From positions 18,414,001-18,478,000 of the forward strand of contig NC_043022.1 of the NCBI RefSeq assembly GCF_006345805.1: a stretch of 64,000 nt of DNA. The letters run 5' to 3'. Shown in pieces: positions 5,738-58,884 of the stretch (position 1 is the first letter of the stretch; the number at the start of each line of letters is the position of its first letter). Source of the DNA: Octopus sinensis. Its lineage: Eukaryota. Position numbers and translations under genes: made by a program. The notes beneath the pieces are model-generated. The model saw only the letters and a program-made list of their open reading frames with translations, was not told the DNA's origin and did not search any database.

Positions 5738-7390
5738 GTAAGTATATTCTTGTAGTACGTCTTCCTTGGTTCTGTTGTTTCTCCTGTTAAGAAGAGCATC
5801 CAGCCACGGAAACTGCCCAAAACTGAGTGCTGCCCTTTGTCTCATCAGATCCTTTCAACCTATCCAATGCATGCCTGTATGGAAAGCAGACTGAAAATGA
5901 TGATGGTGGTGGCAGTGGAGGTGATGGTACCGATGTTGGTGATGATGTTGGTGATGGTGATGATGGTGGTGGTGGTGGTGGTGGTGGTGGTGGTGATGGT
6001 GATGGTGATGATGGTGGTGGTGATGGTGATGATGTTGGTGATGGTAATGATGTTGGTGATGGTGGTGGTGGTGGTGATGGTAATGATGTTGGTGATGGTG
6101 ATGATGTTGGTGGTGGTGGTGGTTTTGAAGATGATGATGATGATAAAAATGCAGATGGAATGGAAAGCCTGAATGAAACACTGAAAATCAAGACCAAATA
6201 GACATGTGCCTACAACCTCTCCCTGCCTTTCAGCACCACCATCACACCTCCACCACACAACCATCTGGAAACCTTTTCCATATTTTAAACATAGAAATAT
6301 TCAGAAAATACACATACACATTCATACACAAACATATACATACACAAAACACAAATAAAAATAAAAGTATGCAAGCAAAACAACCAAAAAAAAGAGGGGA
6401 ACAAAATACCCTTTTTTATTGATTTTATTTGATTAGAATAAATCTTGCTGGGAGTTCTCCTCCCCTCACATAACTCCCCCCCCTCCGCCGCAACCCCCAC
6501 CCCCTCCCCACAACCCTTTCCTACCTCTTCCCAGCATTTACCTTTCTCAGTTTGAATAACATTTACGCTCACCATCGTCAATACCACCACCACCACCATC
6601 AACACCACCATCATAGCTATCTCCACCGCTACCACTGGCTCCCTCCATGTCCATCCAACTTACCTCCCCCCCACCTTTCTGGTCCCTTCCACCTGACCCC
6701 CCCCACCACCCCGCCCTTGAAATTTTTTTCGTTTTATTTGATTGTTATTCATTTTATTCTTTGTTTTGTTTTCGCCCTGAAGGCAATGTGTCCCCCTGTC
6801 CCTATCCCCTGTTTCACACTCCCACTAACCTCTTATACTTTTGCTGCATTTTACTAAATAAACACTGTAGATGATAGTGATGATGATGCTGGTGATGGCG
6901 ATATTTATGATGATGATGATGATGATGATGGCAGTTATGGTGGTGGTGATGATGATGATGGTTTATGACCCTGAAGAAAAGGAAGAGATTTTTGTTGATG
7001 TTTTTAATCACAACATATGTATGTTATGCTTGTGTGTATGGTAAGAAGATTGCTTCTCGACCACATGGTTCTGGGTTCAGTCCCACTGCTTGGCACTTCA
7101 GGCTCATGTCTTGTACAGTGTACTTAAGCTGAGCGAAGCCTTGTACATGAGTCTGTTTGATGGAAATTGAAAGAAACCTGCCATATATACATACTTATGT
7201 ATATATATATATAAAATACAAAATGGGACAAGAACGCAAAACATCCAGACAGTTAGGTGATACAAAAAAGGGATAACAAAACATTCAGATAGACGATACA
7301 AAGAAAACAAGGACAGGTCATTCAAAGTTTTCTTTCCTCAGTCAAGCACCAGATTATCCTTGCAATTTTGGCTGATTATACTTGAGATTG

Positions 7391-7432
<42 letters not shown>

Positions 7433-8573
7433 TTACTTCATTATTAAAGCATATTACTCTACCTCTGGTAGGTATTCGAGTACCATTTTTCCCCCCACCT
7501 TGTTTTACATTTACGTGCTTAATTGGATATATATATATATATTTATATCATCATCATCATCGTCATCATTTAACATCTGTTTCCCATGTTGCGATGGGTT
7601 GGACAGTTTGGGTACAGCTGGATGCCATTCCTAATGCCAGCCACTTTACAGTGTGTACTGAGTGCATCTTAAGTGGCACTGGTACAGGTGCTTTTTATGT
7701 GGCACCAGCACCAATAGGGTTGCCAAGTAACTTACTTGCAAGACAAAACATTTCTTCAGGTGGTGGCAGGTGGCATTAACCAAAGTGACTTAGGATATCA
7801 GTTCTGTTGTGGTGGGTGGATCATCTTCAGTACAGCTAGGTGCCAGGTAGTATCTCAGTTCTTTGTCATCTCTGTCATAAGGCTCCATGTTTTGAGATCA
7901 GCTTTCATCACTTTATCCCATGTCTTCCTGGGTCTACCTCTTCCATGAGCTCTTTCCACATGTGTCTGTGTTTATATAACTGTATGGGTGTGTCTTCGTG
8001 TTTGTCTCCCAACACTGCTTCACGATCAGTGTTAGTTTGTTTATATTCGCATAACTTAGCAGTTTGGCAAAGGAGACCAATAGAATAAGTTCCAGGTTTT
8101 AATATCTAAGAACTGGGTTGATTCATTTCACTCAAACCCTTCAAGGCAGAGCCCCAGAATGATCACAGTCTAATAACTCGAGCCTGTAAAAGACAAAAGA
8201 TATACATATGTGTGTGTATATATGCATGCATACACACACACACACACATGCATATACACTAGCACACACTCACACACATGCATATACACTGGCACACACA
8301 CACAGAACTTGCAATGTGGGACAGGATGGAATTGTAAACCAATATTTGGCACTGAATTAACAAAATTTCAAACTGTTTTCTCTATTTGTTTTGATGTGGG
8401 TTGCATTTTATTTTATTTTACCTCGTTTGTTTTCTTTCTAATTTACCTTTGTGTCCTACAGTTCTGGGTTTCAAATCCTGCCAAAGTCAACGTGACCTTT
8501 CACCCCTTTTTGTAAAACGGTGTCGCTACCACCATCACCTTTGGCACCAGTTTATAGAAAATATCTAGTTGTG

Positions 8574-9108: not shown

Positions 9109-9146
<38 letters not shown>

Positions 9147-10235
9147 CATTGGAGCGGCTGTGTGGTAAGTAGCTTGCTTACCAACCACATGGTTCCGGGT
9201 TCAGTCCCACTGTGCGGCACCTTGGGAAAGTGTCTTCTACTATTGCCTTGGGCCGACCAAAGCCTTGTGTGTGGATTTGGTTGATGGAAACTGAAAGAAA
9301 CCCGTCGTATATATGTATAAATATGTGTGTGTTGTGTTTGTCCCCCCAACATCGCTTGATAACCAATGCTGGTGTGTTTACATTCCCGTAAAAGAGACCA
9401 ATAAAATAAATACTAGGCTTACAAAGAATAAGTCCTGGGAGCGATTTGCTTGACTAAAGGTGGTTCTCCAGCATGGCCACAGTCAAATGACTGAAACAAG
9501 TAAAAGAGTAATAAATGAACATTCCAGAGAAAATCCTATCATTCCCTCCATCTAATGAGGAATTCTCTTGCATTTAATTCTAGTTTGGTAAGCACCATGC
9601 ATGAAACCATTTTTGATCCTTGGTTAACTTTTGTAACTTTCTGCTACCAGAACCATGGGGTTCATATGCAAAACATTCTATATCTTTTGTTTCCATTCAA
9701 GCTCTCTCTCTCTCTTTACTCTTTTACTTGTTTCAGTCATTTTGACTGCGGCCATGCTGGAGCACCGCCTTTAGTCGAGCAAATCGACCCCAGGACTTAT
9801 TCTTTGTAAGCCCAGTACTTATTCTATCGGTCTCTTTTGCCGAACCGCTAAGTAACGGGGACATAAACACACCAGCATCGCTTGTCAAGCAATGCTAGGG
9901 GGACAAACACAGACACACAAACATACACATATATATATATATATACATATATACGACAGGCTTCTTTCAGTTTCCGTCTACCAAATCCACTCACAAGGCA
10001 TTTGTCGGCCCGGGGCTATAGCAGAAGACACTTGCCCAAGATGTCACGCAGTGGGATTGAACCCTGAGCCATGTGGTTGGTTAGCAAGCTACTTACCACA
10101 CAGCCACTCCTGCGGATACACCTTTTTATTTTTGTGGGTTGGCCACTTCACGAACTTCGTGAATATTTTCACAACTTATTTCATATGTATGTATATATAC
10201 ACATATATCAATACCTATATACACTTGTTTTGCAG

Positions 10236-10812: not shown

Positions 10813-11522
10813 TTACAGCTATTGTTTTCTTGGACCCTCATTTCAAGCTAAAACAAACTCCATACAGTAAAAATCACACCCATGTTTACTGACATAAAGA
10901 CACAGCTGCAGCCCCAGTAACCCTCCCTAGCTTCCTAAGGCCCCATGTTAAGATGCCCTCCACCTAAGAATAATATGTTGAGCAGGAACCCTCAGCCCAC
11001 CTGCCCTGCATCCTGTGTCTCAGTAACTACCGCACCCACTACCACCTGACCTGGCCACAACTGCCTTCACTACAGCAACAACAACTGTCACTGTCAGTGC
11101 TATAACTACCACACCCACCACCACCATCACTATTATTGACACTACCAGCAGCGCTACAATCACCAACACTACCACCACCCCCACCACCTCTATTATAACT
11201 TCAGAAACCATCACCACTACAGTCATTACAGCCACAACAACTACAACTTATACCACAACCTATACCATTTCCACCACTACCATTACAATCATTACAGCCA
11301 CAACCATTACAATTTATACTACAGCCTATACCATTACCACCACCACCTCTACTATAACTTCAGCAACCACCACCACTACAATCACTGCAGCCATAACCAC
11401 TACAACATATACTACAACCAAGACCACCATCACCTACCAATACTATAATTGTTAGAACCATCCCACCACCATGTGTACCACTTATATGTCAATCATTTTT
11501 TTCCCCACCGTCGTTTTTTCAG

Positions 11523-11774
11523 ATATTGTCAACTGTGACAACTTGACAACAGAGAAGCCGAAAGTGGAAGAATCTAGTAATACGGCAATCATCGTTGGCT
11601 GTGTGAGTGTCTTATTGTTTGTCGGGGTGATAGTTGCATTGTGTTATTACTTTTGCTTCCATCGACCGAGGTCACGCAGTCACAAGAAGCGGGCACCCAC
11701 CCAGGAGGAGCTCGACGCCGTCGTCTCTCAGGTGATAGAGAACGCGAAAAAAGATGAAAAATATTGCAAACAAG
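11523..11774 (+). CDS. TNFR-like death receptor, exon C: stalk, transmembrane helix (AIIVGCVSVLLFVGVIVALCYYFCF), basic stop-transfer segment, PTQE motif
   Basis: Acceptor gttttttcAG at 11521-11522 and donor g|GTAAGC at 11775. A hydrophobic run of about 24 aa is followed by HRPRSRSHKKR; phases 1 to 1. Confidence 0.9.
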
Positions 11775-12017
11775 GTAAGCAGTCGTTTGGTTATATCTGT
11801 TAGTCCGTTTGTTGGCAGGGTGGGAAGAGGTTGCGATTAGTGGGTGGAAGCATTCTTTTCTGTTTCCGCCTCACATACACACAGCTATTTTTGAAGTAAA
11901 CTACATTTGCGGACAAACCCTAAATGAAGGTACATAGCTGGAAAAAGAACTCAGATGGTCGGGCCTCCAACCAGGCCTTTCATGATCCCTTTACAGCCAG
12001 GAATGTTTTGGCAACCC

Positions 12018-12988: not shown

Positions 12989-13114
12989 CCTTAAATACAT
13001 CTTGTACAATTATCGAGAACAATATAGGTCGACAGATCTGGAGTTTACCACAAGAATTGTTCCGTAAGCACTTCCAAGCTGGGAAATATGAAGTTATAGT
13101 GGAAAAATATAAAG
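12989..13114 (+). CDS. TNFR-like death receptor, exon D: N-terminal half of death domain, (A)LNTSCTIIENNIGRQIWSLPQELFRKHFQAGKYEVIVEKYK
   Basis: Acceptor ttttctctgtcttttcAG ends at 12988. The IG-x2-W-x2-L pattern fits death-domain helix 2. Donor g|GTACAG at 13115 (an in-frame alternative donor lies at 13064); the frame closes with TAA shortly after. Not in the ORF track because it has no ATG. Confidence 0.75.
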
Positions 13115-15828: not shown

Positions 15829-17628
15829 CTCTCTCTCTCTTTCAGAGAGGCACTGAGCAGCTATATGCACATAGACACACAGGGCAGTAACTTCCACCTA
15901 CTGAATTCAATGACAAAGCTTCGGTCAGCTCGGGGTTATAGTGGAAGACACCTACCCAAAGTGCCATGCAGTGGGACTGAACTCGAAACCATGTAGCTAA
16001 GAAGCAAGCTCCCTAACCACACAGCCATGCCCATTCATATTTGGAATTAAATAAATTCCGCCTTGGTCGAATTTGCCTTTCATCCTTTCGGGGCCGATAA
16101 ATTAAGTACCAGCTACGCACTAGGGTCGATGTAATCGACTTAATCCCTTTGTCTGTCTTTATTTGTCCCTTCTGTGTTTAGCCCCTTGTAGGCAATAAAG
16201 GAATAAAATACATGGATAATAAAAAAAAAATAGGTATACACAGTATACAATGAAAAGGAAGGGAAATGCAAAGGTTAAAAAATAAAAGATAAAAATAGAT
16301 TTTAAAAGGTGGTTGATGATAGAGATGTAATCCTCCTGATACTGGATGACCTCTAGGGATAATCGAGGCACTCCACCGTCCAAGGCCGAGTGCCCTCTCT
16401 AATTCCCCTTCCCTGACTCACAGGTCTACACTTAGAGAGGTAATAGCAACGATGGTGATTTCTTTTAAACTAGTTGACAGAGAAGCCATGTTGTACTTGT
16501 AATAAACCCAAGCCTTAGATATGTACGGATGCATTCAGTTATGCATGAGTTGTTGGGAACAGGAACGCCATTAGTGGTGGTGGTGGTGGTGGTGGTGGTG
16601 GTGGTGGTGGTGGTGACATTTATATGATAGTGGGAGAGAGGATGATGATGGTGGTTGTGATAGTGATGATGATGGTGGTGGTGTTGATGATGATGATGGT
16701 GGTGGTGGTGATAGTGATGATGATGGTGGTGGTGATGATGATGGTGGTGGTGTGGTGATAGTGATGATGGTGGGGTGGTGGTGGTGGTGACATTTATATG
16801 ATAGTGGGAGAGAGGATGATGATGGTGGTTGTGATAGTGATGATGATGGTGGTGGTGTTGATGATGATGATGGTGGTGGTGATAGTGATGATGATGGTGG
16901 TGGTGTTGATGATGATGGTGGTGGTGGTGATAGTGATGATGGTGGTGGTGGTGGTAGTGATAGTGATGGTGGTGGTGGTGTTGATGATGGTGGTGGTGGT
17001 TGTGATAGTGATGATGGTGGTGATAGTGATGATGGTGGTGGTGATAGTGATGATGGTGGTGGTGGTGTTGATGATGGTGGTTGTGATAGTGATGATGGTG
17101 GTGTTGATGATGATGGTGGTTGTGATAGTGATAATGATGATGATGGTGATGATAGTGACTGAGATACTGATGTCTTCCATTACAGGTAAATAATTAAAAA
17201 CAAGAAACTAATACTAATTAGGAGAGTCGTTGGTAAATGTGCTCAAGTGTGAGTGAGGGTGTGTGAGTGAGTGCACTTCCTATTAATAAAAAAAGAAACC
17301 ATTGATACTGATCTTTACTGGATATATACACGCAATATGAATGGTTTATATACATGCAAGCTTTTGCATGTGGCTTCTGTGTTTGTACATGCACACACAC
17401 ACACACGTTTTAATACCACCACACACACACATAAAAGCATACACACACGTACAGACACCACCACCACCATCACAACCACCATCATCATCAACACCACCAC
17501 CACCATCATCACTATCACACCCACCATCATCATCAACACCACCACCATCATCACTATCATAACCACCATCATCATCCTCTCTCCCACTATCATATGAATG
17601 TCACTACCACCACCACCACCACTGCAAA

Positions 17629-19538: not shown

Positions 19539-19830
19539 CATTGTGTACAGTGCTCAGGTGCACTACAACTCATCTAAAGTGTATATATAATCAGGTGTAG
19601 TTTCGGCGGATTTCGGAAAGCATGAGGGCCTTAAAGGATGCAGTGTCATGGCAGTCAACAACTGACGCAGGCAGTTTATTCCATGCTTCAGCAACTCTGA
19701 GCGTGAAAAAATGTTTCCGAAAGTCATGGGAGCTGTGTTGTTTTCTGACTTTGTAGGCATGTCCACGTGTGTTGGACACATGGAGATCAAAAAGGTAGAC
19801 GAAATTGCCAATCTTTGAGTTAGTTTGGAA
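19500..19830 (-). mobile_element. CR1/L2-like LINE 3' end with (TTA)n tail
   Basis: NTRGHAYKVRKQHSSHDFRKHFFTLRVAEAWNKLPASVV on the minus strand, followed by a short 3' UTR and TTA repeats. Confidence 0.75.
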
Positions 19831-21515
19831 CTTTTGGCAATTAAGCTTTGCTGTGAGGTTTTGAAGTTCGTTTTGCAAAGGTGTGGTTTCTGGTTCAGTT
19901 CCATTGTGGAGCACCATGTGCAAATGTCTTCGACTATATAGGCACAGGAGTGGCCGTGTGGTAAGTAGCTTGCTTGCCAACCACATGGTTCCGGGTTCTG
20001 TCCCACTGCATGTCACCTTCGGCAAGTGTCTTCTACTATAGCTTTGGGTCATCCAAAGCCTTGTGAGTGGATTTGGTAGACGGAAACTGAAAAGAAGCCC
20101 ATTGTATATATGTATATATATATATATGTATGTGTGTGTTTTTGTGTCAGTGTTTGTCCCCCCCAACATCGCTTGACAACTGATGCTGGTGTGCTTACGT
20201 CTCCGTAACCTAGCGGTTCGGCAAAAGGAGACCGATAAAATAAGTACTAGGCTTGCAAAGAATAAGTTATGGGGTCGATATGCTCGACTAAAGGCGGTGC
20301 TCCAGCATGGCCACAGTCAAACGACTGAAACAAGTAAAAGAGAGTATTGCTCCAGGCCAACCAATACCTTGCGAGTGAGTTTGGTGGACAGAAGCTGAAA
20401 GAAGCCTGTCATATATATAGATTAGTATGTGTTTGTCCCTCACCACCGCTTGACAACTGGTGTTGGTGTGTTTAAGAAAAAGACTTAATCAATACATAAA
20501 ATTTTAATAAATTGACTATTTATTAAAATTTTATGTATTGATTAAGTCTTTCCTTGTTTGTTTTGCAAAATAGTGGTTTTGTCTCTAATAATATTTTATG
20601 ATCGTGACGATGCCGGACCCTCCGGCCCCTGTGCAGGTGGCACGTAAAAAGCACCCAATCCACTCACGGAGTGGTTGGCGTTAGGAAGGGCATCCAGCCA
20701 TAGAAACTCTGCCAGATTCAGACTGGAGCCTGGTGCGGCCCCTGGCTTCCCAGACCCGGTCAAACCGTCCAACCCGTGCTAGCGCGGAAAGCGGACGTTA
20801 AACGATGATGATGATGATGATGATGATATATATATAAACAAATATCTAAATACATACATACATATATATACACCTGTCAAACCAAATTTTGCTTGAGGTC
20901 ATGTTCATACCTACATATATATATATATATATTGAGGCATACATATACATATATAAACATACACATGGCCTCTGCTCACTGCCAAATATTGCCAAAAATA
21001 ATGCCGATTGCTGCTAATATTTGGTGCCAAACATTGTGGAGTTGTTTAGTTTAGAAAATATTAGTGAACTTTTACAAATCTTTGGAGCCAAATATTTCCA
21101 AAAAGATATATATATATATATATATATAATAAATATTAGGGAATAAATCCAAATTTACAGGGAAAAAATCAGATTTAGGATTAAATCCAATTTTATAGTA
21201 AAATATTATAAAATATTATTAGAGACAAAACCACTATTTTGCAAAACAAACAAGGAAAGACTTAATCAAAATAGTGGTTTTGTCTCTAATAATATTTTAT
21301 ATATATATATATATATAATAATATCAGGGTAATAAAGATATCTTTTTTACTCTGATATTATTAATTATTGATAATTTTTTTCTGGAAAATTGTTCGAAGA
21401 AATGCCGGTATTTTTTTTTCTGCCGACAAAATACTGCTCTTGCGCAGTGGATTTGAAAAATTATAATGTATAAGCAAGAGGCATATGCTGGGTTTGCCTC
21501 GTACTTATATGTTTA

Positions 21516-21602
21516 ATCTAGGTGTACCTGCTGAGGAAGACTTCGCCTAGCAAATTATTTTATTTGCTAAAACAGTCTGAAACCATAGTCCAGGAGATAG
21601 AT
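21516..21602 (+). ncRNA. Type I hammerhead ribozyme motif, intact core, extended stems I and II
   Basis: Stem I CCTG/CAGG plus ATCTA/TAGAT; CTGAGGA at 21531-21537; stem II AGAC/GTCT plus TAGCAAAT/ATTTGCTA; GAAA at 21579-21582; stem III AC-CATA-GT; cleavage triplet GUC at 21588-21590. Confidence 0.75.
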
Positions 21603-21733
21603 GGTAAATGTTTTTATTTTTCATTCCCTTCAAGTTTTTATCCCTAATAATGGTTTGGACTTTAGCTGTTCCTTCTAGCATGAAAGGAATCCTATGATGG
21701 ATACCTCTTAGTGTTTAAATGTACACTGTATTT

Positions 21734-21775
<42 letters not shown>

Positions 21776-21920
21776 TTATATATAGAGGGCATTATACATA
21801 CATGCCAGAGGGCATTATACATACATGCCACACGCTAAGAGGGACAATTAGTCATTTCTACCAAAAATATTACTAATCCCACCGAATGCAATTTTTCAAA
21901 GTAAGACATTTAAAAAATAT

Positions 21921-21968
21921 AGACCTGTATCACAGTGATTTCATACTTACGTATTCATCAGCAGGCCT
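21921..21968 (-). ncRNA. Minimal type I hammerhead ribozyme motif, intact core
   Basis: The minus strand reads AGGCCTG CTGATGA ATAC-GTAA-GTAT GAAA TCAC-T-GTGA TA CAGGTCT. This gives a 7-bp stem I, a GNRA-capped stem II, a palindromic stem III and an AUA triplet. Confidence 0.8.
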
Positions 21969-22276
21969 GAATGTATCATAAATAAACGACCCTGCCCCGC
22001 TTAAGCCGATCAGCTAACTGATCAACATCAACGAAGCACATATATATATATTGTGAAATTTGATTTAATACTACATTGAATTTTTCCCTGTAAGTTTGGA
22101 GTTATATATATATAGTGCATATGCATTGTTGTATGGTTAAGAAGCTAGCTCTGCAACCATGTGGTCAAGTTCGGTGGCATTGTGTGGCACACTGGAGAAG
22201 TGTCTTCTATTTTAGTTCCAGGCTAGCCAATGCTTTCTGAGTGAATTTAGCAGATGGAAACTGTGTAGAGGCCCAT

Positions 22277-23464: not shown

Positions 23465-23709
23465 CATAAATATATGTATGTATATATACACACACACATA
23501 TCCATATGCACTCATTATGCATCTGTTTGTGTATGCATATACGTACAGATAGAAGCATACACATACACATACACACACCTAGTAGTCTGTTCAATGTTTT
23601 TGTGTTGATAAATAGTTGGAGAAAAGGAAAACTACTGAGGAACCCCCCTCCCCCCCCAAAAAAAAACCCACTAACAAAACAAAGCATTCCTTCAGAATCT
23701 CTCAGAAAT

Positions 23710-24495
23710 ACTACCGACACCACAACCACCACCATCATCATCATCATTACCATCATCATCACCATCATTGTTATCATCATCATTACCATCATCACCATTA
23801 TCACCATCATCATCATCATCATTACCATCATCATCATTACCATCATCACCATTATCATCATCATCATCAACATCATTACCATCATCACCATTATCATCAT
23901 CATCATCGTTACCATCATCATCATTACCATCATCACCATTGTCATCATCATCATCATCATCATTACCATCATCATCATTACCATCATCACCATTGTCATC
24001 ATCATCATCATCATTACCATCATCATCATTACCATCATCACCATTATCATCATCATCATCATCATCATCACCATTATCATCATCATCATCATTACCATCA
24101 TCATCATTACCATCATCACCATTGTCATCATCATCATCATCATCATTACCATCATCACCATTATCATCATCATCATCATTACCATCATCACCATTATCAT
24201 CATCATCATCATCATTACCATCATCATCATTATCATCATCACCATTGTCATCATCATCATCATCATCATTACCATCATCATCATTACCATCATCATCATT
24301 ACCATCATCATCATTACCATCATCACCATTATCATCATCACCATCATCATCATTACCATCATCATCATTACCATCATCACCATCATCATCATTACCATCA
24401 TCATCATTACCATCATCATCATTACCATCATCATCATTACCATCATCATCATTACCATCATCACCATTATCATCATCACCATCATCATCATCGTC
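23710..24495. repeat. Compound (CAT/CAC/TAC/TAT) trinucleotide array
   Basis: About 780 bp of CATCATCATTAC-type units, which explains the overlapping low-complexity ORFs on both strands. Confidence 0.95.
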
Positions 24496-24709
24496 AGAAA
24501 ATATAAATTTGATTTTGACATTTTTACCTCTTCCTTTTTTTCTTTCATTTCTTATAATTCTTTTTTTTTTTTTTGATATTTTTCTGTAGTAATTATTCAA
24601 TTTATGTAAATATTTTTTCACAGTAGCTTTTTAACTTCCTCTCCACCTTTTCCTTCTCTCTCTCACTCACTCACACACACACACACACACACACCTCCTT
24701 CTCTTTTTC

Positions 24710-28742: not shown

Positions 28743-31382
28743 TAAGAGATAAAAAGTAACTTTTTGTTCATTCATTTCACGTCACTGCTTTTCCATTGCC
28801 ATTTCCAGAAAAGGAAAATTTTAACAAACATGGACTTCAAATCTACATCTGTTTTTTATCTGACACTCTTCATTTTTTTTTATTAATCTTCTTTCTTCTT
28901 TTCCTTTTCTTCCCTGTCTCTCCTGGGTTTTCCCTTTAGTAACTGAAGAAGAAATATCACCAAAAATATAGCTTCAACTTTTTCTGTTCATCTTTCTGTG
29001 TTCACCTGACAATATTAACTATGAACAATTATCTTGTACTTTAGTTATTTTTGTTTTTTTGTTCTATTTCGCACTGACACACATACAGTTATTCTAAAAT
29101 GGACTAATTTTCACATTTTATTCTTGTATTTTTATAATACTATGTATTACAACAACACAAATACATTCATGTTTTATAACAATCTTTAAGTAGTGGTACC
29201 ATTAACAAATAGCTAATGTGCTTTTGTGTGTGTGTGTGTGTATGTATGTGTTTGTTTATCTTGTGTGTATAGCATATATATAGTGTGTGTGTATATTATA
29301 TCTTGTGTACAAATAAATGTACAACTGCTACTGTTAAGTTTGGAGTTCCACATAGACTGTCTTAGTCCAGTCTAATTCTAGTATACAGGTTAAGCAGCTA
29401 CTGTCCTAATTGTCTTGTTACGAAATACAGGCACAGGAGTGGCTGTGTGGTAAGTAGCTGGCTTACCAACGACATGGTTCCGGGTTCAGTCCCACTGCAT
29501 GGCATCTTGGGCAAGTGTCTTCTACTATAGCCTCGGGTCAACCAAAGCCTTGTGAGTGGATTTGGTAGACGGAAACTGAAAGAAGCCCATCGTATATATG
29601 TATATAATTATGTATGTGTATATGTTTGTGTGTCTGTGTTTGTCCCCCTAGCATTGTTTGACAACCGATACTGGTGTGTTTACATCCCCGTAACTTATCG
29701 GTTCGGCAAAAGAGACCGATAGAATAAGTACTGGGCTTACAAAGAATAAGTCCTGAGATCGATTTGCTCGACGAAAGGCAGTGCTCCAGCATGGCCGCAG
29801 TCAAATGACTGAAACAAGTAAAAGAGTACACTTGTGTTTATCATAATTTCTCTCATATATATATTACTCTTTTTTTTTACTCTTTTATTTGTTTCAGTCA
29901 TGTGACTGTGGCCATGCTGGAGCACCGCATTTAGTTGAGCAAATCGACCCCAGGACTTATTCTTTGTAAGCCCAGTACTTATTCTATCGGTCTCTTTTGC
30001 TGAACCGCTAAGTAACGGGGACATAAACACACCAGCATCGGTTGTCAAGCAATGCTAGGCGGACAAACATAGACACACAAACACACACATGCATATATAT
30101 ATACGACGGGCTTCTTTCAGTTTCCGTCTACCAAATCCACTCACAAGGCTTTGGTCGGCTCATGGCTATAGTAGAAGACACTTGCCCAAGGTGCCACGCA
30201 GTGGGACTGAACCCGGAACCATGTGGTTGGTAAGCAAGCTACTTACCACACAGCCACTCCACATATATATTTATGTTTGTGTGTGTGTATTATAAATAAT
30301 CTTTAATAGCATCCCATGGACATGAGAGTGTAGTCACAAAGAAACACTTGTCATCTGGAAACATATGTAGCAATGCTTTCTTAATATATATTTTTTCACA
30401 AACGGTTATAATGATGATGAATTCTTATTCTTTAAGCTCTAACTCCTCCTGAAGCTACATCCCCTGCTGATTCAGACATTGTTGCAAGGAGCTCTCTCTT
30501 GGAATCTTTGGGTAAGAAAAATCAGCACCCAAAGACTAGCCACCTCTGCCCTTCATCTCCATCACAAATGCCACCACCACCCTTTACTTTGCTACTTAGC
30601 CCACTGACCACTCTCCAGTGTCATCATCCCTGATACCACCCACTTCCTGCTCTCGTTCTCCCTCTTCCTCTCCATCAATTTATTAACTTGGTACTTAGTG
30701 AAAACACTTTTGTTTCATTGCCTTTTTACGAATTGCAGTATACCCCTATTGGTGTGTTTACATCCCCATCACTTAGCGGTTCGGCAAAAGAATAAGTACT
30801 GGGCTTACAAAGAATAAGTCCCGGGGTCGATTTGCTCGACTAAAGGCGGTGCTCCAGCATGGCCGCAGTCAAATGACTGAAACAAGTAAAGAGAGTAGAT
30901 TGTCTTACTTGTTACGAAATATGAGAGATTATTATAAACACAAGTTCGTATCATTAGTTCTTACATGCATTTCACCATTTTGAGTGCTTGGAACCCTACA
31001 TTACATGTTCCAAGAGAATTTAGAGGCTTAAACAGAGTGGATCACCAGGGAACACTTTATTGCATTAGGTTACATTAGTCCTCTGTAATTTAATGCCATA
31101 AAGTGTTTCCTCATCATTTGTCCTGGTTAAACATCCATATGTTCTTGAAACATCCAACGTAAGATTCCAAGAGACCATAATTGTGAAATATATGCAGAAA
31201 CTAATAATGTAGGCGTAGGAGTGGCTGTGTGGTACGTAGCTTGCTTACCAACCACATGGTTCTGGGTTCAGTCCCACTGCGTGGCACCTTGAGCAAGTGT
31301 CTTCTACTATTGCCTCCGGTCGACCAAAGCCTTGTGAGTGGATTTGGTAGACAGAAACTGAAAGAAGCTTGTCGTATATATG

Positions 31383-31413
<31 letters not shown>

Positions 31414-31899
31414 ATATGTTTGTGTGTCTGTGTTTGTTCCCCAACATTGCTTGACAACCGATGCTGGTGTGTTTACGTCCCCGTAACTTATCGGTTCGGC
31501 AAAAGAGACCGATAGAATAAGCACTAGGCTTACAAAGAATAAGTCCTGAGGTCAATTTGCTCGACAAAAGGCAGTGCTCCAGCATGGCTGCAGTCAAATG
31601 ACTGAAACAAGTAGAAGAGTACACTTGTGCTTATCATAATTTCTCTCATACATATATATATTTCTTTTTTTTTTTTAATCTTTTACTTGTTTCAGTCATT
31701 TGACTGCGGCCATGCTGGGCACCGCATTTAGTCGAGCAAATTGACCCCAGGACTTATTCTTTGTAAGCCCAGTACTTATTCTATCGGTCTTCTTTGCCGA
31801 ACCGCTAAGTAACCGCATTGTAAACACACCAGTATCGGTTGTCAAGCAATGCTAGGGGGACAAACACAGACACACAAACACATATATATATATATATAG

Positions 31900-36310: not shown

Positions 36311-37434
36311 GAAGCAAGAGGGTGACTCAAGTACGAAGTGTTCGTGCGTTAGTATGAAACACTTGGCTGGTAAGGCTGATGATGGTGAGGCAGTGCCGGT
36401 AAGGCGAGGCTGGCAACGATCACACTCAAATGGTGCTTTTTCATGTGTCACTGGCACGGGAGCCAATCCGTGGCCCTGGCAACGATACTTGTTATCTGGA
36501 AATATGTGTGTGTGTGCATGTGGACATCTGTGTTTAAGTGTGAGTGTGTCTGTATTAATGCGTACCTGTATGTATGCATGTGCAAATAAGGTGGTAAGAA
36601 TGTATGTTGGCCCTTGAGGTACTCACCTGCTTCTGCTAAGTACCAATAAAAGTATATATATGTAATTAGGCATAGATGTCTATGTCTGTGTAATTAAGAA
36701 GCTCAATTTACAACCTTCAGGCAGGTTTCCTTTACTAAAGTTCCAGAATGACCAATAGATTGCGAGTAAATTCGATAAACACAGGTGTGTGTATGTGTAT
36801 CATTAGTTTGTTTTATCCCCTCCTCCACCACTTCACAACAGGTGTTTGTTATTTACATCCCCTTAACATAGTAGTTGATATGTATCAGACTTCAAAATAT
36901 GTATCAGACTTCAAAAAACAAACACAGGTACTAGATTTGATTTGTGCATATATATATATATTATGTATGTATATATGAATGTATGTGTGTGTGTGTGTTA
37001 AATAAAATACGATAACAAAGCCAAGGCATTGTGATATTTCTTGGACATTTATAAAGCCAAAGGTGACCTTAGAGCTAGCTGCAAGATCACTTTCTCTTTA
37101 TAAATGTCCTCAGAATATCAAATCACATTGGCCTTGTTACCTTATTTTATTTAACCTACCTTAGATTCCTCGCTCATGCTATTATTGAACCGGGAGCTTA
37201 ACAGTGGTCCTTCCATAGCACTTCCGTAGCCTCACCTGCCTTTTGGATCTTTTGGATACCAAAACCTTTCAGGCGCAGGAGTGGCTGTGTGGTAAGTAGC
37301 TTGCCAACCAACCACATGGTTCCGGGTTCAGTCCCACAGCATGGCATCTTGGGCAAGTGTCTTCTGCTATAGCCCCAGGCCGACCAATGCCTTGTGAATG
37401 GATTTGGTAGACAGAAACTGAAAGAAGCCTGTCG

Positions 37435-37465
<31 letters not shown>

Positions 37466-37988
37466 CTGTTTGTCCCCCTAGCATTGCTTGACAACCGATG
37501 CTGGTGTGTTTACGTCCCCGTCACTTAGCAGTTCGGCAAAAAGAGACTGATAGAATATATACTGGGCTTACAAAGAATAAGTCCCGGGGTCGATTTGCTC
37601 GACTAAAGGCGGTGCTCCAGCATGGCCGCAGTCAAATGACTGAAACAAGTAAAAGAGTATATATATATATATAATAATAATAATTGAGGGAATATTATGG
37701 TGTAATTTAATTGTTCATTTTGAATTGATAAAAGGTGGGTTTTTTCTAATTTATATATATATATATATATATATACTGCTCCAGCTTGGCCTTAGCCCAG
37801 ATAAATGAAAGTAACTAAAGACCTCAAGAACAGATTAAATCAAATGTTTGTTTGTGTGTGTAACTATTTATATTTAGAGCTAACATTTACATTTTATTTA
37901 TTTTTTTCTTTTTAGTTTCTTTGAATTTTAATATCAAAAGGTGAAACAGTTAGTTTAAAACTAATATATTTGTTATATAATATCAATA

Positions 37989-38997: not shown

Positions 38998-39384
38998 ATA
39001 TAGACCAACATAACTCTCTCCTTCGAAGGCTGCTGCTGCTGTTTCTAGCAGGCTGAGAGACTGCATATAAGACTCCTTGTTATTGCATGCGTTATTTGTT
39101 TTATATGACAGGAAAGTTATGTGGAGGTCCTTTTCTTTTAATTTTTGCTCCTTAAAATTATTAACTTTTTCGTGTCTACAGTTCTTAGTGGATTGCCTCT
39201 GTTTCAATCAGTTTTGGAATTTTTTTTTTTTTTGCTTTGGATGGTTTGACTTTAACTGCATATGTTGACAGTTTTATTGTCAAAACAAGTCTCCTTGTTT
39301 TGACATTGTGTGTTGGTTGTAAACAGCTTCCTCATTATACAAGTGGTGTCATGCTTTTCTTGTCTTCTTTGGAATCATATCTGA

Positions 39385-40420
39385 CCAAGGGTAAATATTA
39401 CCTTCCTTGGAAACAGGTGAGGTTTAGCAACAGGAAAAGCGTCCAGAAGAGCATCCAACCAAGGGGAAATATTTTTTGGCTTGGTAACAAGTGGAGGTTA
39501 ACAATAGGAAGGGTATTCAGCCAAGGGTAAATATTACCTTGCTTGGAAAAAGGTGAGGTTTAGCAACAGGAAGGGCATCCAGCCAAGATAAATATTATCT
39601 TGTTTGGAAACAGGTATGGGTTGGCATCCAGTCAATGGGGAATATTGCTTGGCTTGGAAACAAGCAGGGACTAGCAACAGGAAAGGCATCCAGCCAAGGG
39701 TAAGTATTACCTTGCTTGGAAACAGGTGAGGGTTAGCAACAGGAAGAGCATCCAGCCAAGGGGAAATATTTTTTGGCTTGGAAACAGGTGAGGGTTAGTA
39801 ACAGGAAGAGCATCCAGCCAAGGGGAAATATATTTTGGCTTGGAAACAGGTGAGGGTTAGCAACAGGAAGAGCATCCAGCCAAGGGGAAATATTTTTTGG
39901 CTTGGAAACAGGTGAGGGTTAGCAACAGGAAGAGCATCCAGTCAAGCGGAAATATATTTTGGCTTGGAAACACGTGAGGGTTAGCAACAGGAAGGGCATC
40001 CAGCCAAGGGGAAATATTTTTTGGCTTGGAAACAGGTGAGGGTTAGCAACAGGAAGGGCATCCAGCCAAGGGGAAATATTTTTTGGCTTGGAAACAGGTG
40101 AGGGTTAGCAACAGGAAGGGCAACCCACCCAAGGGAAATATTTTTGGCTTGGAAACAGGTGAGGGTTAGCAACAGGAAGAGCATCCAGTCAAGCGGAAAT
40201 ATATTTTGGCTCGGAAACACGTGAGGGTTAGCAACAGGAAGGGCATCCAGCCAAGGGGAAATATTTTTTGGCTTGGAAACAGGTGAGGGTTAGCAACAGG
40301 AAGGGCATCCAGCCAAGGGGAAATATATTTTGGCTTGGTAACAAGTGGAGGTTAACAATATGAAGGGCATTCAGCCAAGGGTAAATATTACCTTGCTTGG
40401 AATAGCAATAGGAAGGGTAT
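39385..40420 (+). repeat. 62-bp minisatellite, about 17 copies
   Basis: GGAAAC anchors at 39780, 39842, 39904, 39966, 40028, 40090, 40151, 40213 and 40275. Confidence 0.95.
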
Positions 40421-40543
40421 CTGGCTGGAGAGAATCTTCCACAAGGAATTTCATTTTACTCCATGCAAAACGATTAAAGTGAATGTTAAAATGACAATGT
40501 ATGCGATGTGTGTCTGAGCTATTTGTTTCGTTATATTTTTTAG

Positions 40544-40696
40544 GGGATCAACCTAAAGCGGCTGTGAATGGCTACTTCAGAGAGTGGCGGAGTTGGAAAG
40601 AAGACAAAGCCGAGACAATCACCGATCTATTCACATGTCTAAAGACATGTAATCGAATCGATATCGTCTACATGATAGCCACAAAGTTAAATGAAA
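40544..40696 (+). CDS. TNFR-like death receptor, exon E: C-terminal half of death domain, (G)DQPKAAVNGYFREWRSWKEDKAETITDLFTCLKTCNRIDIVYMIATKLNE
   Basis: Acceptor tattttttAG at 40542-40543 and donor a|GTAAGT at 40697. W...TI-x2-L-x2-CL-x3-R-x-DIV is the death-domain helix 4-6 pattern. Joined to exon D, the W-to-W spacing is 38 aa (35 in FADD). Confidence 0.8.
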
Positions 40697-40802
40697 GTAA
40701 GTAACTCTTATTTCTCACATTTCTTCATCATTTGTTGTGGGGTGGTTCTGTGCTTGGTATGGATCAGAAGCCCGTCATATAGATGTATGTGTGTGTGTGT
40801 AT

Positions 40803-43252: not shown

Positions 43253-45106
43253 TACACACACATATATACACATATATATACATATATATATATATATAGA
43301 TATATATATAACAAAATTTTAAAAAAAAGATATTTTGGAAAAAGATGAGCAGCCCTTCCTCTGTTTTTCTCTCTCTCCCTTGTAAAGCTATCTCTGTCTT
43401 CTCTTAAACACACACACACACACACTCTTCCATACCTACATAATCTTGTACCCCTTGCTAAACTTTACTAAAGACTACCACCACTACTATCACTGCGCTA
43501 CATCCAATACTATGACATAGAACCACTGCCTGTGTTAACCACAAAACTATATAGCCAAATATTAACACTACCAAAAAAACTACAGACAGCCACTATCACT
43601 ACTACCATCGCTGTAGCCTATACTACAAAAAAAAATCACTTATAAACTACAACCACAACATCATCAAAACGACCATCACCACTAAAACAACTGCCAATAC
43701 TACCACTAAATATCAGCTACTACAACCAAAACAGTTGCTACCACTGTAACCACCACCACCATGGGAACTACCACCAATACTGATAGGACAAATCCACAAA
43801 TACTACCGCCACAATCAGCAACACAATAACAGCTATGGTAATGATGCTGTCACAACTGTAGCCTATACCACCATCACTACCACTACATACCACAACAATC
43901 ACCTCTACTACTATTTCTACTACCGCCAATACAGTGAAAAAATACCAAGCCAGTGGATAATCTCTTAAAAGGAAAACTAAAGAGAAATAAGGGTCATTCC
44001 TTCAAATTGGGATCACTCCTTAATCCCCATATTTGAAATATATTTGTTTTTTGGTTGTTTTTTGTTTTTTGTTTTTTTGGGAAAAAGTGGTAATTGAGGG
44101 AAAGTGACAGGGTTCCTGATAAATATTTTATTCTTGAAAAATTGTTTTGTTACCATTAGTTTAGCACTTCTCTCCATGTCTCTCTCTCCCTCTCTGATAT
44201 GTAACAACCTGATATGTAACAACCTTCCCCCCAACACACACTGCAAATAATGGTGAGGATACCAGATTATGTGAAATGGGCCTTTTAACAGCCAGACCAC
44301 GAGACCAGTGCTAGCTCATATGATAGCATAACCTGTATTGCTTTGTATATAGAATTTTATTTACGTGTGTATATATATATATATGTATACACACACACAC
44401 ACACACATAGATATATATCACGTGATCACATGACCAACCAGAGTATCATGTTACAATTCGCTGGTCACAATGTGCTTTGCCTTGTTTTAGCCATCGAATG
44501 ATGCCACCCTGATGGCTAGGCATGCAGGCCAACACTTCCCCTTGATCGAAAGGGGAACTGGAGCAAAATGGAATGAAGTGTTTTGCTCAAGAACACAATG
44601 CACTTCCCAGTCTGGGAATCGAACCCATGGTCTAGCGATCATGAGCGCAACAACCTAATCACTAGGCCACATGCCTTCACTATATGTATATATATATACA
44701 TATCTATATATATATATATACACACATATATATACATGCTCACACACAACCTACCTTAGACTTCTCATGCTATTATTGAACCAGGAGCTTAACAGCAGTC
44801 CTTCCATAACACTTACATAGCCTTACCTGCCCTTTGGGTCTTCTGGATACCAAAACATCTCATATTATTATAAATATATATTGATTTATTGATTGAGGGG
44901 ATAGTTATGACCCTGGCAATCGCTCATCAGTACATCACACAGGATCCTGTTTAGCATAGTATTCCAATAATCAAAGAAAGATGGGTGAGACTCTAATTAA
45001 CACAAACAGGAGCAGTTCGCAACACCAAGGCAAGATCCTGTAGGTTTAATATAAGCCCCGCAGAGTAAATAATAATAATAATAATTATAATATTAATAAT
45101 AATAAT

Positions 45107-45489
45107 AAGGCGCAGGAGTGGCTGTGTGGTAAGTAGCTTGCTAACCAACCACATGGTTCCGGGTTCAGTCCCTCTGCGTGGCATCTTGGGCAAGTGTCTT
45201 CCACTATAGCCTCAGGCCGACCAATGCCTTGTGAGTGGATTTGGTAGACGGAAACTGAAAGAAGCCTGTCGTATATATGTATGTGTTTGTGTGTCTGTGT
45301 TTGTCCCCCTAGCATTGCTTGACAACCGATGCTGGTGTGTTTACGTCCCCGTCACTTAGCGGTTTGGCAAAAGAGACCGATAGAATAAGTACTAGGCTTA
45401 CAAAGAATAAGTCCCGGGGTCGATTTGCTCGACTAAAGGCAGTGCTCCAGCATGGCCGCAGTCAAATGACTGAAACAAGTAAAAGAGTA
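45107..45489 (+). mobile_element. tRNA-derived SINE family A (representative copy; 20+ full or partial copies in the window)
   Basis: Head GGCGCAGGAGTGGCTGTGTGG..GGTTCAGTCCC, central TA/TG tract and AGTAAAAG tail. Other copies include 9143-9509, 9717-10112(-), 19938-20345, 26742-27157(-), 27193-27585, 29428-29828, 29875-30261(-), 31211-31621, 31677-32092(-), 35018-35368, 37271-37658, 42144-42524(-) and 61431-61810. Confidence 0.9.
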
Positions 45490-45689
45490 ATAATAATATT
45501 GATAATAATTTAAATGAGGAAAGAAGTCAAATCAACATTACACTTGTTTCCATAAATGCATTTTTTATTTCCTATCTCATACAGTGTTATGTAATGCATT
45601 CCGTATATACAAATATGTAATAATGACTATTGTTTGTTCACTTCTTCAGACATTCTTGATTTGAAAATATAATCAACCCATGGGTATTA

Positions 45690-58202: not shown

Positions 58203-58240
<38 letters not shown>

Positions 58241-58337
58241 CAGAGTAAACACATAAATGTGAAACAAGGTGGAAAAAAGAGTACTCAAATACCAGGGGTA
58301 GAGTAATATGCTTTTTTTTTAAAAGCAGCAGAAATTC

Positions 58338-58390
58338 AACAAAACCTGTTACTCAGAGTTTCACGTTCCCGTTCGTCAGACAGTTTTGTT
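58338..58390 (-). ncRNA. Minimal type I hammerhead ribozyme motif, intact core
   Basis: The minus strand reads AACAAAACTGT CTGACGA ACG-GGAA-CGT GAAA CTC-T-GAG TA ACAG(G)TTTTGTT. This gives an 11-bp stem I with one bulge, a GNRA-capped stem II and a GUA triplet. Confidence 0.8.
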
Positions 58391-58595
58391 AAAACTGTAT
58401 ACATATATATATATATATATATATATCTATATATACACACACACACACCCATACACACTTTTAGAGTCATAAATGTGACTGACAACCCTTTACATCTACA
58501 GGCAGCAAGAGACTGACTCAACCAAAATTGAAATTATTTATCTTTCTTTGCTTTGGAAATGGGTACTCTTTCTTCTTTGTCAGTCAACACTCAAT

Positions 58596-58629
<34 letters not shown>

Positions 58630-58884
58630 TCATCATATAATATATATATATATATATACTTTATTTAAAAGCAGCAGAAATTCAACAAAATCTGTTACTC
58701 AGAGTTTCACGTTCCCTTTCATCGGGAAACTCCGAGTAACAGGTTTTGTTGAATTTCTGCTGCTTTTAAATAAAGCATATTACTCTACCCCCTGGTAATT
58801 TGAGTACTCTTTTTACCACCTTGTTTCACATTTATGTGTTTACTCCGGTATATATAATATATATAATATATAACTATCTATATA

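What the first reader, a model, noticed from the sequence alone, without database searches (positions are those of the whole stretch)
21516..21602. Intact sense-strand hammerhead ribozyme inside the intron that splits the death domain
Seen: all conserved core nucleotides (CUGAGGA, GAAA, GUC) with correctly paired stems. Stem I has an internal loop (GGUGUA/AGA) and stem II is extended by an internal loop plus an 8-bp hairpin. Known: natural type I hammerheads use stem I bulge/loop II contacts for fast cleavage, and intronic hammerheads occur in amniote genes. Inference: it would cut the receptor pre-mRNA between 21590 and 21591, after exon D and before exon E. That could uncouple the ligand-binding/TM part from an intact death domain, or be rescued by exon tethering. 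An upstream hairpin (GAGGCA/TGCCTC, about 21470-21510) suggests a larger structured RNA.
Basis: partly seen in the sequence, partly recalled or inferred. Interest (0 to 1): 0.8.

Follow-up and report, generated by a model that had tools for sequence, protein, structure and literature searches.

The report
Retroelement-type hammerhead motif in octopus intron
The hammerhead ribozyme motif is really there, on the sense strand of a 27-kb intron that splits the death domain of an octopus TNF-receptor-like gene, but it is one of three such motifs in the window and looks like a leftover of a mobile element, not a device that controls the receptor.

Summary
Window 21516-21602 (+) holds a complete type I hammerhead motif: CUGAGGA, GAAA, A15.1-U16.1 and C17, with the cut predicted at 21590/21591.

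It is not a chance match. A descriptor of the same stringency expects 0.008 hits per shuffled window and 0.009 with scrambled cores in the real sequence.

The scan found two more perfect-core hammerheads, both on the minus strand: 21968-21921, 338 nt away and convergent, and 58390-58338. All three lie in short non-coding segments bounded by (TA)n microsatellites. The third belongs to a repeat family with a 5'-truncated copy and a head-to-head inverted copy. These are the published hallmarks of Penelope-like retroelement termini and retrozymes, including "dual hammerheads on opposite strands 100-700 bp apart".

The host gene is Octopus sinensis LOC115224692, a TNFR-superfamily receptor. The intron (13115-40543) does split a death-domain fold.

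Self-cleavage is doubtful:
- No Rfam hammerhead model reports the motif, even at E<=10.
- The 10.1-11.1 pair is A-U, not the conserved G-C.
- Helix III has only 2 bp.
- A competing fold is 6 kcal/mol more stable.

Conservation in other octopus genomes could not be tested. This is a new member of a known kind, of modest interest.

The parts
21516..21602 (+). HHR-A, the reported type I hammerhead motif. Stem I is 4 bp + internal loop + 5 bp. The core is CUGAGGA / GAA. Stem II is 5 bp + internal loop + 8-bp hairpin. Helix III is 2 bp + CAUA loop. C17 is at 21590, so the predicted cut is 21590/21591.
   Evidence: Read directly and found by the descriptor scan. The scan expects 0.008 such hits per window.
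21461..21513 (+). Hairpin immediately upstream of stem I (AUAAG-CAA-GAGGCA ... UGCCUC-GUA-CUUAU).
   Evidence: Present in the minimum-energy and centroid folds of 21325-21720, which fold better than shuffles (z = -3.2).
21318..21728 (+). Segment A: the 411-bp non-coding stretch that carries HHR-A. It is bounded by (TA)10 at 21298-21317 and (TA)28 at 21729-21784. The hammerhead cut site lies 138 nt from the segment's 3' end.
   Evidence: Tandem Repeats Finder. No other copy in the window.
21921..21968 (-). HHR-B, a second, compact hammerhead on the opposite strand: AGGCCUG CUGAUGA AUAC-GUAA-GUAU GAA AUCA-CUG-UGAU A|CAGGUCU. The predicted cut is 21928/21927, 338 nt from the HHR-A cut site and convergent with it. 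It shares the CCUG/CAGG base of stem I and A10.1-U11.1 with HHR-A.
   Evidence: Descriptor scan, sequence, fold.
21785..22036 (-). Segment B, which carries HHR-B and abuts the same (TA)28 with its 3' end. The cut site lies 143 nt from that end. The 3' tail contains a perfect 23-nt tandem duplication at 21784-21830.
   Evidence: The fold has z = -3.0. The tail aligns with the tail of element C better than 99% of shuffles and of real-sequence controls.
58338..58390 (-). HHR-C, a third hammerhead: AACAAAACUGU CUGACGA ACG-GGAA-CGU GAA ACU-CUG-AGU A|ACAG(G)UUUUGUU.
   Evidence: Descriptor scan at the (3,3,2) setting, sequence.
58240..58397 (-). Element C1, a 158-bp copy that carries HHR-C, bounded by (TA)19 and (AT)18.
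58659..58848 (-). Element C2, a head-to-head inverted pair of 5'-truncated C copies. It folds as a hairpin of about 42 bp (z = -12). Its hammerhead half is degenerate: CCGAUGA with a broken stem II. It is bounded by (TA)35 and (AT)29.
7436..7525 (+). Element C3, a 5'-truncated copy of the C family (3' tail only, no hammerhead), again bounded by (TA)n on both sides.
   Evidence: nhmmer E = 1e-07, sequence.
12989..13114 (+). Exon D of the host gene, encoding the first half of the death domain (ALNTSCTIIENNIGRQIWSLPQELFRKHFQAGKYEVIVEKYKG).
   Evidence: AG/GT splice sites and matching phase. The translation is identical to the Octopus proteins.
40544..40697 (+). Exon E, encoding the second half of the death domain (DQPKAAVNGYFREWRSW...IATKLNE). 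The intron between D and E is 13115-40543 (27,429 nt).

Best explanation
HHR-A is a genuine hammerhead-type sequence, not a chance match. It is carried by a short non-coding fragment of a hammerhead-bearing retroelement of the Penelope-like element (PLE) / non-LTR retrozyme kind. That fragment landed in a (TA)n microsatellite inside the 27.4-kb intron of an Octopus sinensis TNFR-superfamily death-domain receptor gene.

Shown:
- The motif is complete and statistically unexpected.
- A second hammerhead lies 338 nt away on the other strand, and a third lies elsewhere in the window.
- All three sit between (TA)n tracts, 110-143 nt from the 3' end of their segment.
- The third belongs to a repeat family with a 5'-truncated copy and a head-to-head inverted copy.

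Inferred:
- In the parent element the hammerhead served to process the element's own RNA.
- Here it is a lone monomer with a 2-bp helix III, an A-U pair at 10.1-11.1 and a more stable competing fold. It therefore probably cleaves the intron RNA slowly or not at all.
- It probably has no adopted role in receptor expression, and any cut inside the intron would largely be tolerated.
For: 1. The motif is as described.
2. Chance expectation is 0.008 per window from shuffles and 0.009 from 540 decoy cores on the real sequence, where the true core ranks top.
3. Allowing one core mismatch adds no further hits, so the two motifs at 21.5-22.0 kb stand out sharply.
4. HHR-B and HHR-C were found by the same scan.
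5. Microsatellite boundaries come from Tandem Repeats Finder.
6. The C family has three copies in the window. One is 5'-truncated to the tail and one is a head-to-head inverted dimer.
7. The tails of B and C, which exclude the selected hammerhead, align better than 4952 of 5000 dinucleotide shuffles and 2120 of 2131 real-sequence controls.
8. Literature:
   - PLE hammerheads lie in the terminal repeats. They have short helix I (4-5 bp), long helix II and helix III of 1-2 bp.
   - They occur mostly as single, scattered, truncated copies, with "dual min-HHRs ~100-700 bp apart in opposite strands".
   - Single motifs show no detectable cleavage (PMC4209133).
   - PLEs show 5' truncation, adjacent inverted 5'-truncated copies and microsatellite, (TA)n, targeting (PMC8557442).
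   - A PLE enzyme nicks and extends both strands of AT-rich DNA (PMC11167929).
   - 44% of Xenopus retrozyme copies are intronic (bioRxiv 10.64898/2026.07.22.740005).
9. The nearest-neighbour energy of the hammerhead fold of A is -14.2 kcal/mol, against -20.2 for a fold that pairs C3-U4-G5 and G7-G8 with helix III residues.
Against: - Segment A has no second copy in the window, so its repeat nature is inferred from its neighbours and flanks, not shown.
- No PLE reading frame (RT + GIY-YIG) was found. The one RT fragment confirmed by Pfam (49280-49648, minus strand) matches only the generic RVT_1 model and lies far away, and the ORFs next to the hammerheads were not searched for GIY-YIG.
- There are no tandem direct repeats of the retrozyme kind.
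- The A/B pair is tail-to-tail, whereas the usual PLE inverted pair is head-to-head, so two insertions have to be assumed.
- PLE hammerheads are reported to keep G10.1-C11.1 and a palindromic helix III/loop 3 (PMC4209133). A, B and C all have A10.1-U11.1, and A's helix III stretch ACCAUAGU is only 6/8 self-complementary.
- Both cores at 21.5-22.0 kb are perfect. That fits a young insertion or selection as well as it fits a relic.
Confidence: 0.6

Rival explanations
1. This is the reader's view: a working intronic ribozyme. HHR-A self-cleaves the nascent receptor pre-mRNA at 21590/21591 and so modulates how much full-length, death-domain-containing mRNA is made. It would be a domesticated retroelement hammerhead, like the amniote intronic ones.
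For: - Perfect core, sense strand, and internal loops in stems I and II that could make a tertiary contact.
- The segment is more structured than shuffles (z = -3.2).
- The 3' splice site lies 18,953 nt downstream. My inference is that even a slow ribozyme would have minutes to act before the intron can be spliced.
- Precedent: conserved sense-strand intronic hammerheads in RECK, CTCL and DTNB of amniotes are thought to be domesticated from retroelements (PMC6155905).
Against: - No Rfam hammerhead model, including the intronic HH9/HH10 models, reports it at E<=10.
- It has A10.1-U11.1, a 2-bp helix III and a competing fold that is 6 kcal/mol more stable.
- Single copies of this build were inactive in vitro in the published cases (PMC4209133).
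- Two similar motifs in the window lie on the antisense strand, where they cannot serve the gene.
- No conservation data are available.
- An efficient hammerhead placed in an intron has been used experimentally without abolishing expression. This rests on the Dye et al. 2006 'exon tethering' paper as cited in PMC2288634; the details are from my own knowledge.
Confidence: 0.12
2. HHR-A is a chance match in AT-rich, hairpin-rich intron DNA. Only the neighbouring motifs (B, C) derive from real hammerhead-bearing elements.
For: - The first stage presumably read many windows. At 0.008 expected hits per window, chance matches exist somewhere in a 2-3 Gb genome.
- A has no detectable homology to B or C outside the core. 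The whole-length alignment gives p = 0.046 for A-B and 0.72 for A-C. The tail-only alignment gives A-B 337 of 5000 shuffles.
- No Rfam hit.
- A-U at 10.1-11.1 is what AT-rich chance matches would favour.
Against: - Real hammerhead motifs are far denser in this window than chance ones: two others against 0.008-0.06 expected.
- A and B share the same four stem I base pairs next to the core (CCUG/CAGG) and the same 10.1-11.1 pair.
- A and B lie mirror-wise about one microsatellite, at nearly equal distances from it (138 and 143 nt).
- A's helix lengths match the published PLE-type architecture (PMC4209133).
Confidence: 0.1
3. HHR-A, the spacer and HHR-B form one unit with a ribozyme in each polarity. 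This would be a DNA copy of a viroid-like or ambisense circular RNA, or a foldback element, rather than two separate insertions.
For: - The two motifs are convergent, 338 nt apart, and placed symmetrically about the (TA)28 tract.
- Both flanking segments are unusually structured.
Against: - The arms are not significantly similar to each other (z about 1.5).
- The spacer is host-like microsatellite DNA.
- Dual opposite-strand hammerheads at this spacing are already described for truncated PLEs (PMC4209133).
- No circular-RNA evidence is available.
Confidence: 0.05

Closest known systems
Hammerhead motifs of Penelope-like retroelements ('min-HHRs', Cervera & de la Pena 2014, PMC4209133)
   Same: [quoted passage not shown]
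- Mostly found as scattered single copies from truncated elements.
- Pairs 100-700 bp apart on opposite strands.
- Insertion into microsatellites, 5' truncation and inverted 5'-truncated copies, seen here for the C family.
- Weak or no activity as single motifs.
   Different: - No PLE RT/GIY-YIG frame or terminal repeat was found next to it.
- The 10.1-11.1 pair is A-U instead of the conserved G-C.
- There is no unpaired base between A9 and 10.1.
- Helix III/loop 3 is not a clean palindrome.
- The A/B pair is tail-to-tail.
Metazoan non-LTR retrozymes (type I hammerheads in 150-450 bp tandem repeats; PMC7229834)
   Same: - Low-GC non-coding unit a few hundred bp long.
- Helix III of 2 bp plus a tetraloop, as in invertebrate retrozyme hammerheads.
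- A structured RNA around the ribozyme.
- Monomer copies are common in introns in Xenopus (bioRxiv 10.64898/2026.07.22.740005).
   Different: - There is no tandem direct repeat here.
- No second copy of segment A is in the window.
- The canonical loop 1 / loop 2 contact nucleotides were not recognised, since there is no Rfam Hammerhead_1 match.
Amniote intronic hammerheads (RECK, CTCL, DTNB; Rfam HH9/HH10; PMC6155905)
   Same: - Sense-strand hammerhead inside an intron of a protein-coding gene.
- Thought to derive from retroelement hammerheads.
   Different: - The amniote motifs are defined by deep conservation at orthologous sites and have canonical tertiary contacts.
- Here conservation is untested, the Rfam models do not match, and antisense siblings lie nearby.

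Membership tests
Hammerhead ribozyme (motif definition, Hertel numbering) | Core C3 U4 G5 A6 N7 G8 A9 and G12 A13 A14 | tested here: met
   CUGAGGA at 21531-37 and GAA at 21579-81. The same holds for HHR-B and HHR-C.
Hammerhead ribozyme (motif definition, Hertel numbering) | A15.1-U16.1 pair and a non-G nucleotide at position 17 | tested here: met
   A21582 pairs with U21589, and C21590 is position 17.
Hammerhead ribozyme (motif definition, Hertel numbering) | Three helices around the core, in type I order (open stem I) | tested here: met
   Stem I is 4+5 bp, stem II is 5+8 bp and helix III is only 2 bp. Stems I and II appear in the minimum-energy fold, helix III does not.
Hammerhead ribozyme (motif definition, Hertel numbering) | G10.1-C11.1 pair closing helix II (highly conserved in natural hammerheads, PMC4209133) | tested here: not met
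   HHR-A has A21538-U21578. HHR-B and HHR-C are also A-U.
Hammerhead ribozyme (motif definition, Hertel numbering) | Self-cleavage giving 2',3'-cyclic phosphate and 5'-OH ends | not testable with these tools
   This needs in vitro transcription or end-mapping. The energetics argue for a poorly populated active fold.
Rfam hammerhead clan (Hammerhead_1 RF00163, Hammerhead_3 RF00008, HH9 RF02275, Hammerhead_II RF02276, HH10 RF02277; accession numbers recalled from memory) | Match to a curated covariance model at its gathering score | tested here: not met
   No match at gathering score over the whole window. No hammerhead match at E<=10 in short searches around A, B or C, although other families were listed down to 7.5 bits.
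PLE-borne hammerheads / non-LTR retrozymes | Location in the terminal repeat of an element with an RT + GIY-YIG frame, or in tandem repeats of 150-450 bp | tested here: not met
   No direct repeat of the segment. The only RT fragment confirmed matches just the generic RVT_1 model and is 28 kb away. GIY-YIG was not searched for in the ORFs next to the motifs.
PLE-borne hammerheads / non-LTR retrozymes | Multi-copy family whose copies keep the helices by compensatory changes | tested here: inconclusive
   The C family has 3 copies in the window and B is distantly related to C. Segment A has no other copy in 64 kb. The octopus genomes could not be searched.
PLE-borne hammerheads / non-LTR retrozymes | Architecture: helix I 4-5 bp, enlarged helix II, helix III 1-2 bp with a small loop | tested here: met
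   HHR-A has 4 bp, 5+8 bp, and 2 bp + tetraloop, compared with PMC4209133 and PMC7229834.
PLE-borne hammerheads / non-LTR retrozymes | Palindromic 15.2-16.2 / loop 3, allowing a two-copy (dimeric) hammerhead | tested here: not met
   ACCAUAGU pairs with itself at 6 of 8 positions, with two C.A mismatches (read). No second copy is nearby on the same strand.
PLE-borne hammerheads / non-LTR retrozymes | Insertion signature: microsatellite target, 5' truncation, adjacent inverted 5'-truncated copy | tested here: met
   Met in full for the C family. For A and B only the (TA)n flanks are seen.
Amniote-type domesticated intronic hammerheads | Conservation at the orthologous intron position across species | not testable with these tools
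   The orthologous genes of O. bimaculoides, O. sinensis and O. vulgaris span 139-332 kb, and their DNA was not returned.

The most novel reading that the evidence does not exclude
HHR-A is a domesticated, catalytically competent intronic ribozyme, conserved among octopods. It cuts the nascent transcript of a TNFR-type death receptor between the exons that encode the two halves of its death domain. That would tune the output of signalling-competent receptor. Alternatively, the convergent A/B pair is a two-polarity ribozyme module of a kind not yet described in animal genomes.
Probability: 0.07. Interest if true: 0.75.

Novelty: new member of a known kind. Interest (0 to 1): 0.3.

Why it matters
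Hammerhead motifs tied to Penelope-like elements and retrozymes are known from many animals. My literature searches found no description of them in cephalopods. A 64-kb octopus window with three perfect-core motifs suggests they may be common there.

If the sense-strand copy in this very long intron were active and conserved, it would be an invertebrate counterpart of the amniote intronic hammerheads, sitting in an immune or cell-death receptor gene. As things stand it is best treated as a retroelement footprint.

Two points are useful for annotation. These motifs escape the Rfam models. All three also carry an unusual A-U pair at 10.1-11.1.

Tried and rejected
- **Rfam.** I searched the whole window at gathering score, and did short E<=10 searches around each motif. 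There was no hammerhead hit. This counts against membership of the curated families but not against the motif, because PLE-type hammerheads are also found with descriptors and not with these models.
- **Self-comparison.** blastn with word size 7 and nhmmer found no other copy of segment A or segment B in the window.
- **Homology between A and B.** A local alignment of A against the reverse complement of B scored 52, against 41.5 +/- 7.2 for shuffles, which is not significant. The A-B tails gave p about 0.07. I therefore do not claim homology of A and B beyond the shared base of stem I.
- **One-mismatch core scan.** It found no degenerate relics at the strict setting.
- **Protein route to other genomes.**
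  - The transmembrane-exon query found nothing in the word-indexed search, although the identical sequence is in the database.
  - Exact look-ups of window ORFs found nothing.
  - Shorter isoforms are not on record.
- **Metagenome scans.** Two scans, one for a C-family tail and one for the HHR-A core, found nothing.
- **Pfam on single exons.** This gave only a sub-threshold Death hit (E = 0.044). The death domain was settled with a homologue profile and a predicted structure instead.
- **Readings considered and set aside.** A head-to-head PLE twin insertion would explain the A/B pair, but the orientation is wrong: they are tail-to-tail. I also found no support for a single foldback element.

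Full report
**The observation**

- Stem I is AUCUA/UAGAT(U) at the outside and CCUG/CAGG next to the core, separated by the internal loop GGUGUA/AGA.
- The core is CUGAGGA (21531-37) and GAA (21579-81).
- Stem II is AGACU/AGUCU, followed by the internal loop UCGCC/AAAC and an 8-bp hairpin (21548-55 with 21562-69).
- Helix III is A15.1-U16.1 plus one C-G pair, closed by CAUA.
- Position 17 is C21590, so the predicted cut is 21590/21591.
- The upstream hairpin is also present.

A hammerhead descriptor that I wrote found the motif independently.

**Is it chance?**

The descriptor required a perfect core, stem I >=4 bp, stem II >=4 bp and helix III >=2 bp.
- 1500 block-wise dinucleotide shuffles of the window gave a mean of 0.008 hits. 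At the looser (3,3,2) setting they gave 0.062.
- A second control keeps the real sequence and its hairpins but scrambles the core strings. It used 540 decoy cores and gave means of 0.009 and 0.063. The true core is the only one with three hits.
- The window has two hits at the strict setting and three at the loose one.
- Allowing one core mismatch adds nothing at the strict setting.

Hammerhead motifs are therefore strongly over-represented in this window.

**Two further hammerheads**

HHR-B lies on the minus strand at 21968-21921: AGGCCUG CUGAUGA AUAC-GUAA-GUAU GAA AUCA-CUG-UGAU A|CAGGUCU.
- Its cut site (21928/27) is 338 nt from that of HHR-A, and the two motifs converge.
- It shares with HHR-A the four stem I pairs next to the core (CCUG/CAGG) and an A-U pair at 10.1-11.1.

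HHR-C lies on the minus strand at 58390-58338: CUGACGA ACG-GGAA-CGU GAA ACU-CUG-AGU A|ACAG. It also has A10.1-U11.1.

**Context of the three motifs**

Each motif sits in a short non-coding segment bounded on both sides by (TA)n. The cut site lies 110-143 nt from the segment's 3' end.
- A is at 21318-21728, between (TA)10 and (TA)28.
- B is at 21785-22036 and abuts the same (TA)28.
- C1 is at 58240-58397.

The C element is a repeat.
- C2 (58659-58848) is a head-to-head inverted pair of 5'-truncated copies with a degenerate hammerhead half.
- C3 (7436-7525) is a 5'-truncated tail, again between (TA)n tracts.

The tails of B and C exclude the hammerhead that I selected for. They still align better than 99% of dinucleotide shuffles and 99.5% of real-sequence controls. 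Segment A has no other copy in the window, and its similarity to B outside the core is not significant.

**Comparison with published work**

Penelope-like elements carry hammerheads in their terminal repeats.
- In Schistosoma these hammerheads have a short helix I (4-5 bp), a long helix II and a minimal helix III.
- Most occur as single scattered copies from truncated elements.
- "Dual min-HHRs" occur 100-700 bp apart on opposite strands.
- Single motifs showed no detectable cleavage (PMC4209133).

PLE insertions show heavy 5' truncation, adjacent inverted 5'-truncated copies and a bias for microsatellites, (TA)n in one clade (PMC8557442). A purified PLE enzyme nicks and extends both strands of AT-rich DNA, and its hammerhead needs the protein to cleave (PMC11167929).

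Invertebrate retrozyme hammerheads typically have a helix III of two base pairs and a tetraloop (PMC7229834). In Xenopus, 44% of retrozyme copies are intronic.

The locus fits this picture well, with some departures.
- There is no PLE reading frame or tandem repeat nearby.
- The A/B pair is tail-to-tail, not head-to-head.
- The 10.1-11.1 pair is A-U, where PLE hammerheads conserve G-C.
- The helix III stretch of A is only nearly palindromic.

**Is it likely to cleave?**

- No Rfam hammerhead model reports A, B or C, at gathering score or at E<=10.
- For A, the hammerhead secondary structure scores -14.2 kcal/mol. The minimum-energy fold scores -20.2 and pairs C3-U4-G5 and G7-G8 with helix III residues. 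The energy model ignores the tertiary structure of the core, so this is a warning, not proof.
- From my own recollection (Ruffner et al. 1990; Tuschl & Eckstein 1993; not re-read here), replacing G10.1-C11.1 lowers activity.

Against this, the 3' splice site lies 18,953 nt downstream. My inference is that even a slow ribozyme would have minutes to act, so activity cannot be dismissed without an assay.

**The host gene**

A HMMER search with exon E found molluscan homologues. A follow-up search named Octopus proteins.
- The window's exons are identical to O. sinensis LOC115224692. They differ by a few residues from the O. vulgaris and O. bimaculoides proteins.
- Exon D (12989-13114) and exon E (40544-40697) have proper splice sites and matching phase. 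They are contiguous in the proteins, so the intron is 13115-40543.
- The ectodomain is of the TNFR superfamily (E = 1e-12 to RANK/CD40).
- A profile of the cytoplasmic domain hits RIPK1, p75NTR and FADD death domains (E about 2-3e-3).
- Its AlphaFold model (pLDDT 87) matches death domains as the top ten Foldseek hits, with target TM 0.62-0.80 (0.68-0.80 among the top eight) and rmsd 2.4-3.4 A.
- The exon junction falls in the middle of that domain.

**What could not be done**

The decisive tests are genome-wide copy number, covariation and presence at the orthologous intron. They need the octopus assemblies, whose DNA I could not obtain.

**Verdict**

This is a real hammerhead motif of the retroelement kind in an ordinary place for such elements. 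It is probably a weak or inactive monomer. The regulatory reading remains possible but unsupported.

Noticed in passing
window 21921-21968 (-): A second perfect-core hammerhead motif on the opposite strand, 338 nt from the reported one and convergent with it. It has a 7-bp stem I, a GUAA-capped stem II and a 4-bp helix III.
   Followed up: yes
window 58338-58390 (-), with related copies at 58659-58848 and 7436-7525: A third hammerhead motif inside a small repeat family. The family shows 5' truncation, a head-to-head inverted dimer (a hairpin of about 42 bp, z = -12) and (TA)n flanks. All three hammerheads in the window have A-U at 10.1-11.1.
   Followed up: partly
window 20538-20602 and 21205-21269: A 65-nt inverted repeat at 98% identity, with arms about 600 bp apart, just upstream of segment A. 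It could be the ends of a small foldback or MITE-like element.
   Followed up: no
window 21316-21363: A 48-nt near-perfect palindrome at the left edge of segment A, next to the (TA)10 tract.
   Followed up: no
window 39349-40464: A tandem array of a 62-nt unit, at least 13 copies at up to 95% identity, lying in the intron within 100 bp of the acceptor site of exon E.
   Followed up: no
window, e.g. 9139-9513, 29424-29878, 31206-31671, 37266-37709, 45103-45539, 61217-61644: A SINE-like interspersed repeat of roughly 400-600 bp, present in about 14-16 copies on both strands. It makes up much of the intron.
   Followed up: no
window 49280-49648 (-) and 49794-50234 (-); also 19594-20316 (-): The first stretch is a reverse-transcriptase fragment (RVT_1, E = 7e-10, with a YADD motif). 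The other two look by eye like retrotransposon ORF ends but gave no Pfam match. None is adjacent to the hammerheads.
   Followed up: partly
window 5830-6220, 16600-17200, 23600-24600: Long imperfect trinucleotide-type arrays (GAT/GGT and the complementary ATC/ACC). They give long spurious open reading frames on both strands.
   Followed up: no
window 11456-11800 (+): The transmembrane exon of the receptor is identical to the O. bimaculoides and O. sinensis proteins. Even so, the word-indexed protein search returned 'no candidate' for it. The same proteins were found later with a longer query. This looks like a tool sensitivity quirk, not biology.
   Followed up: partly
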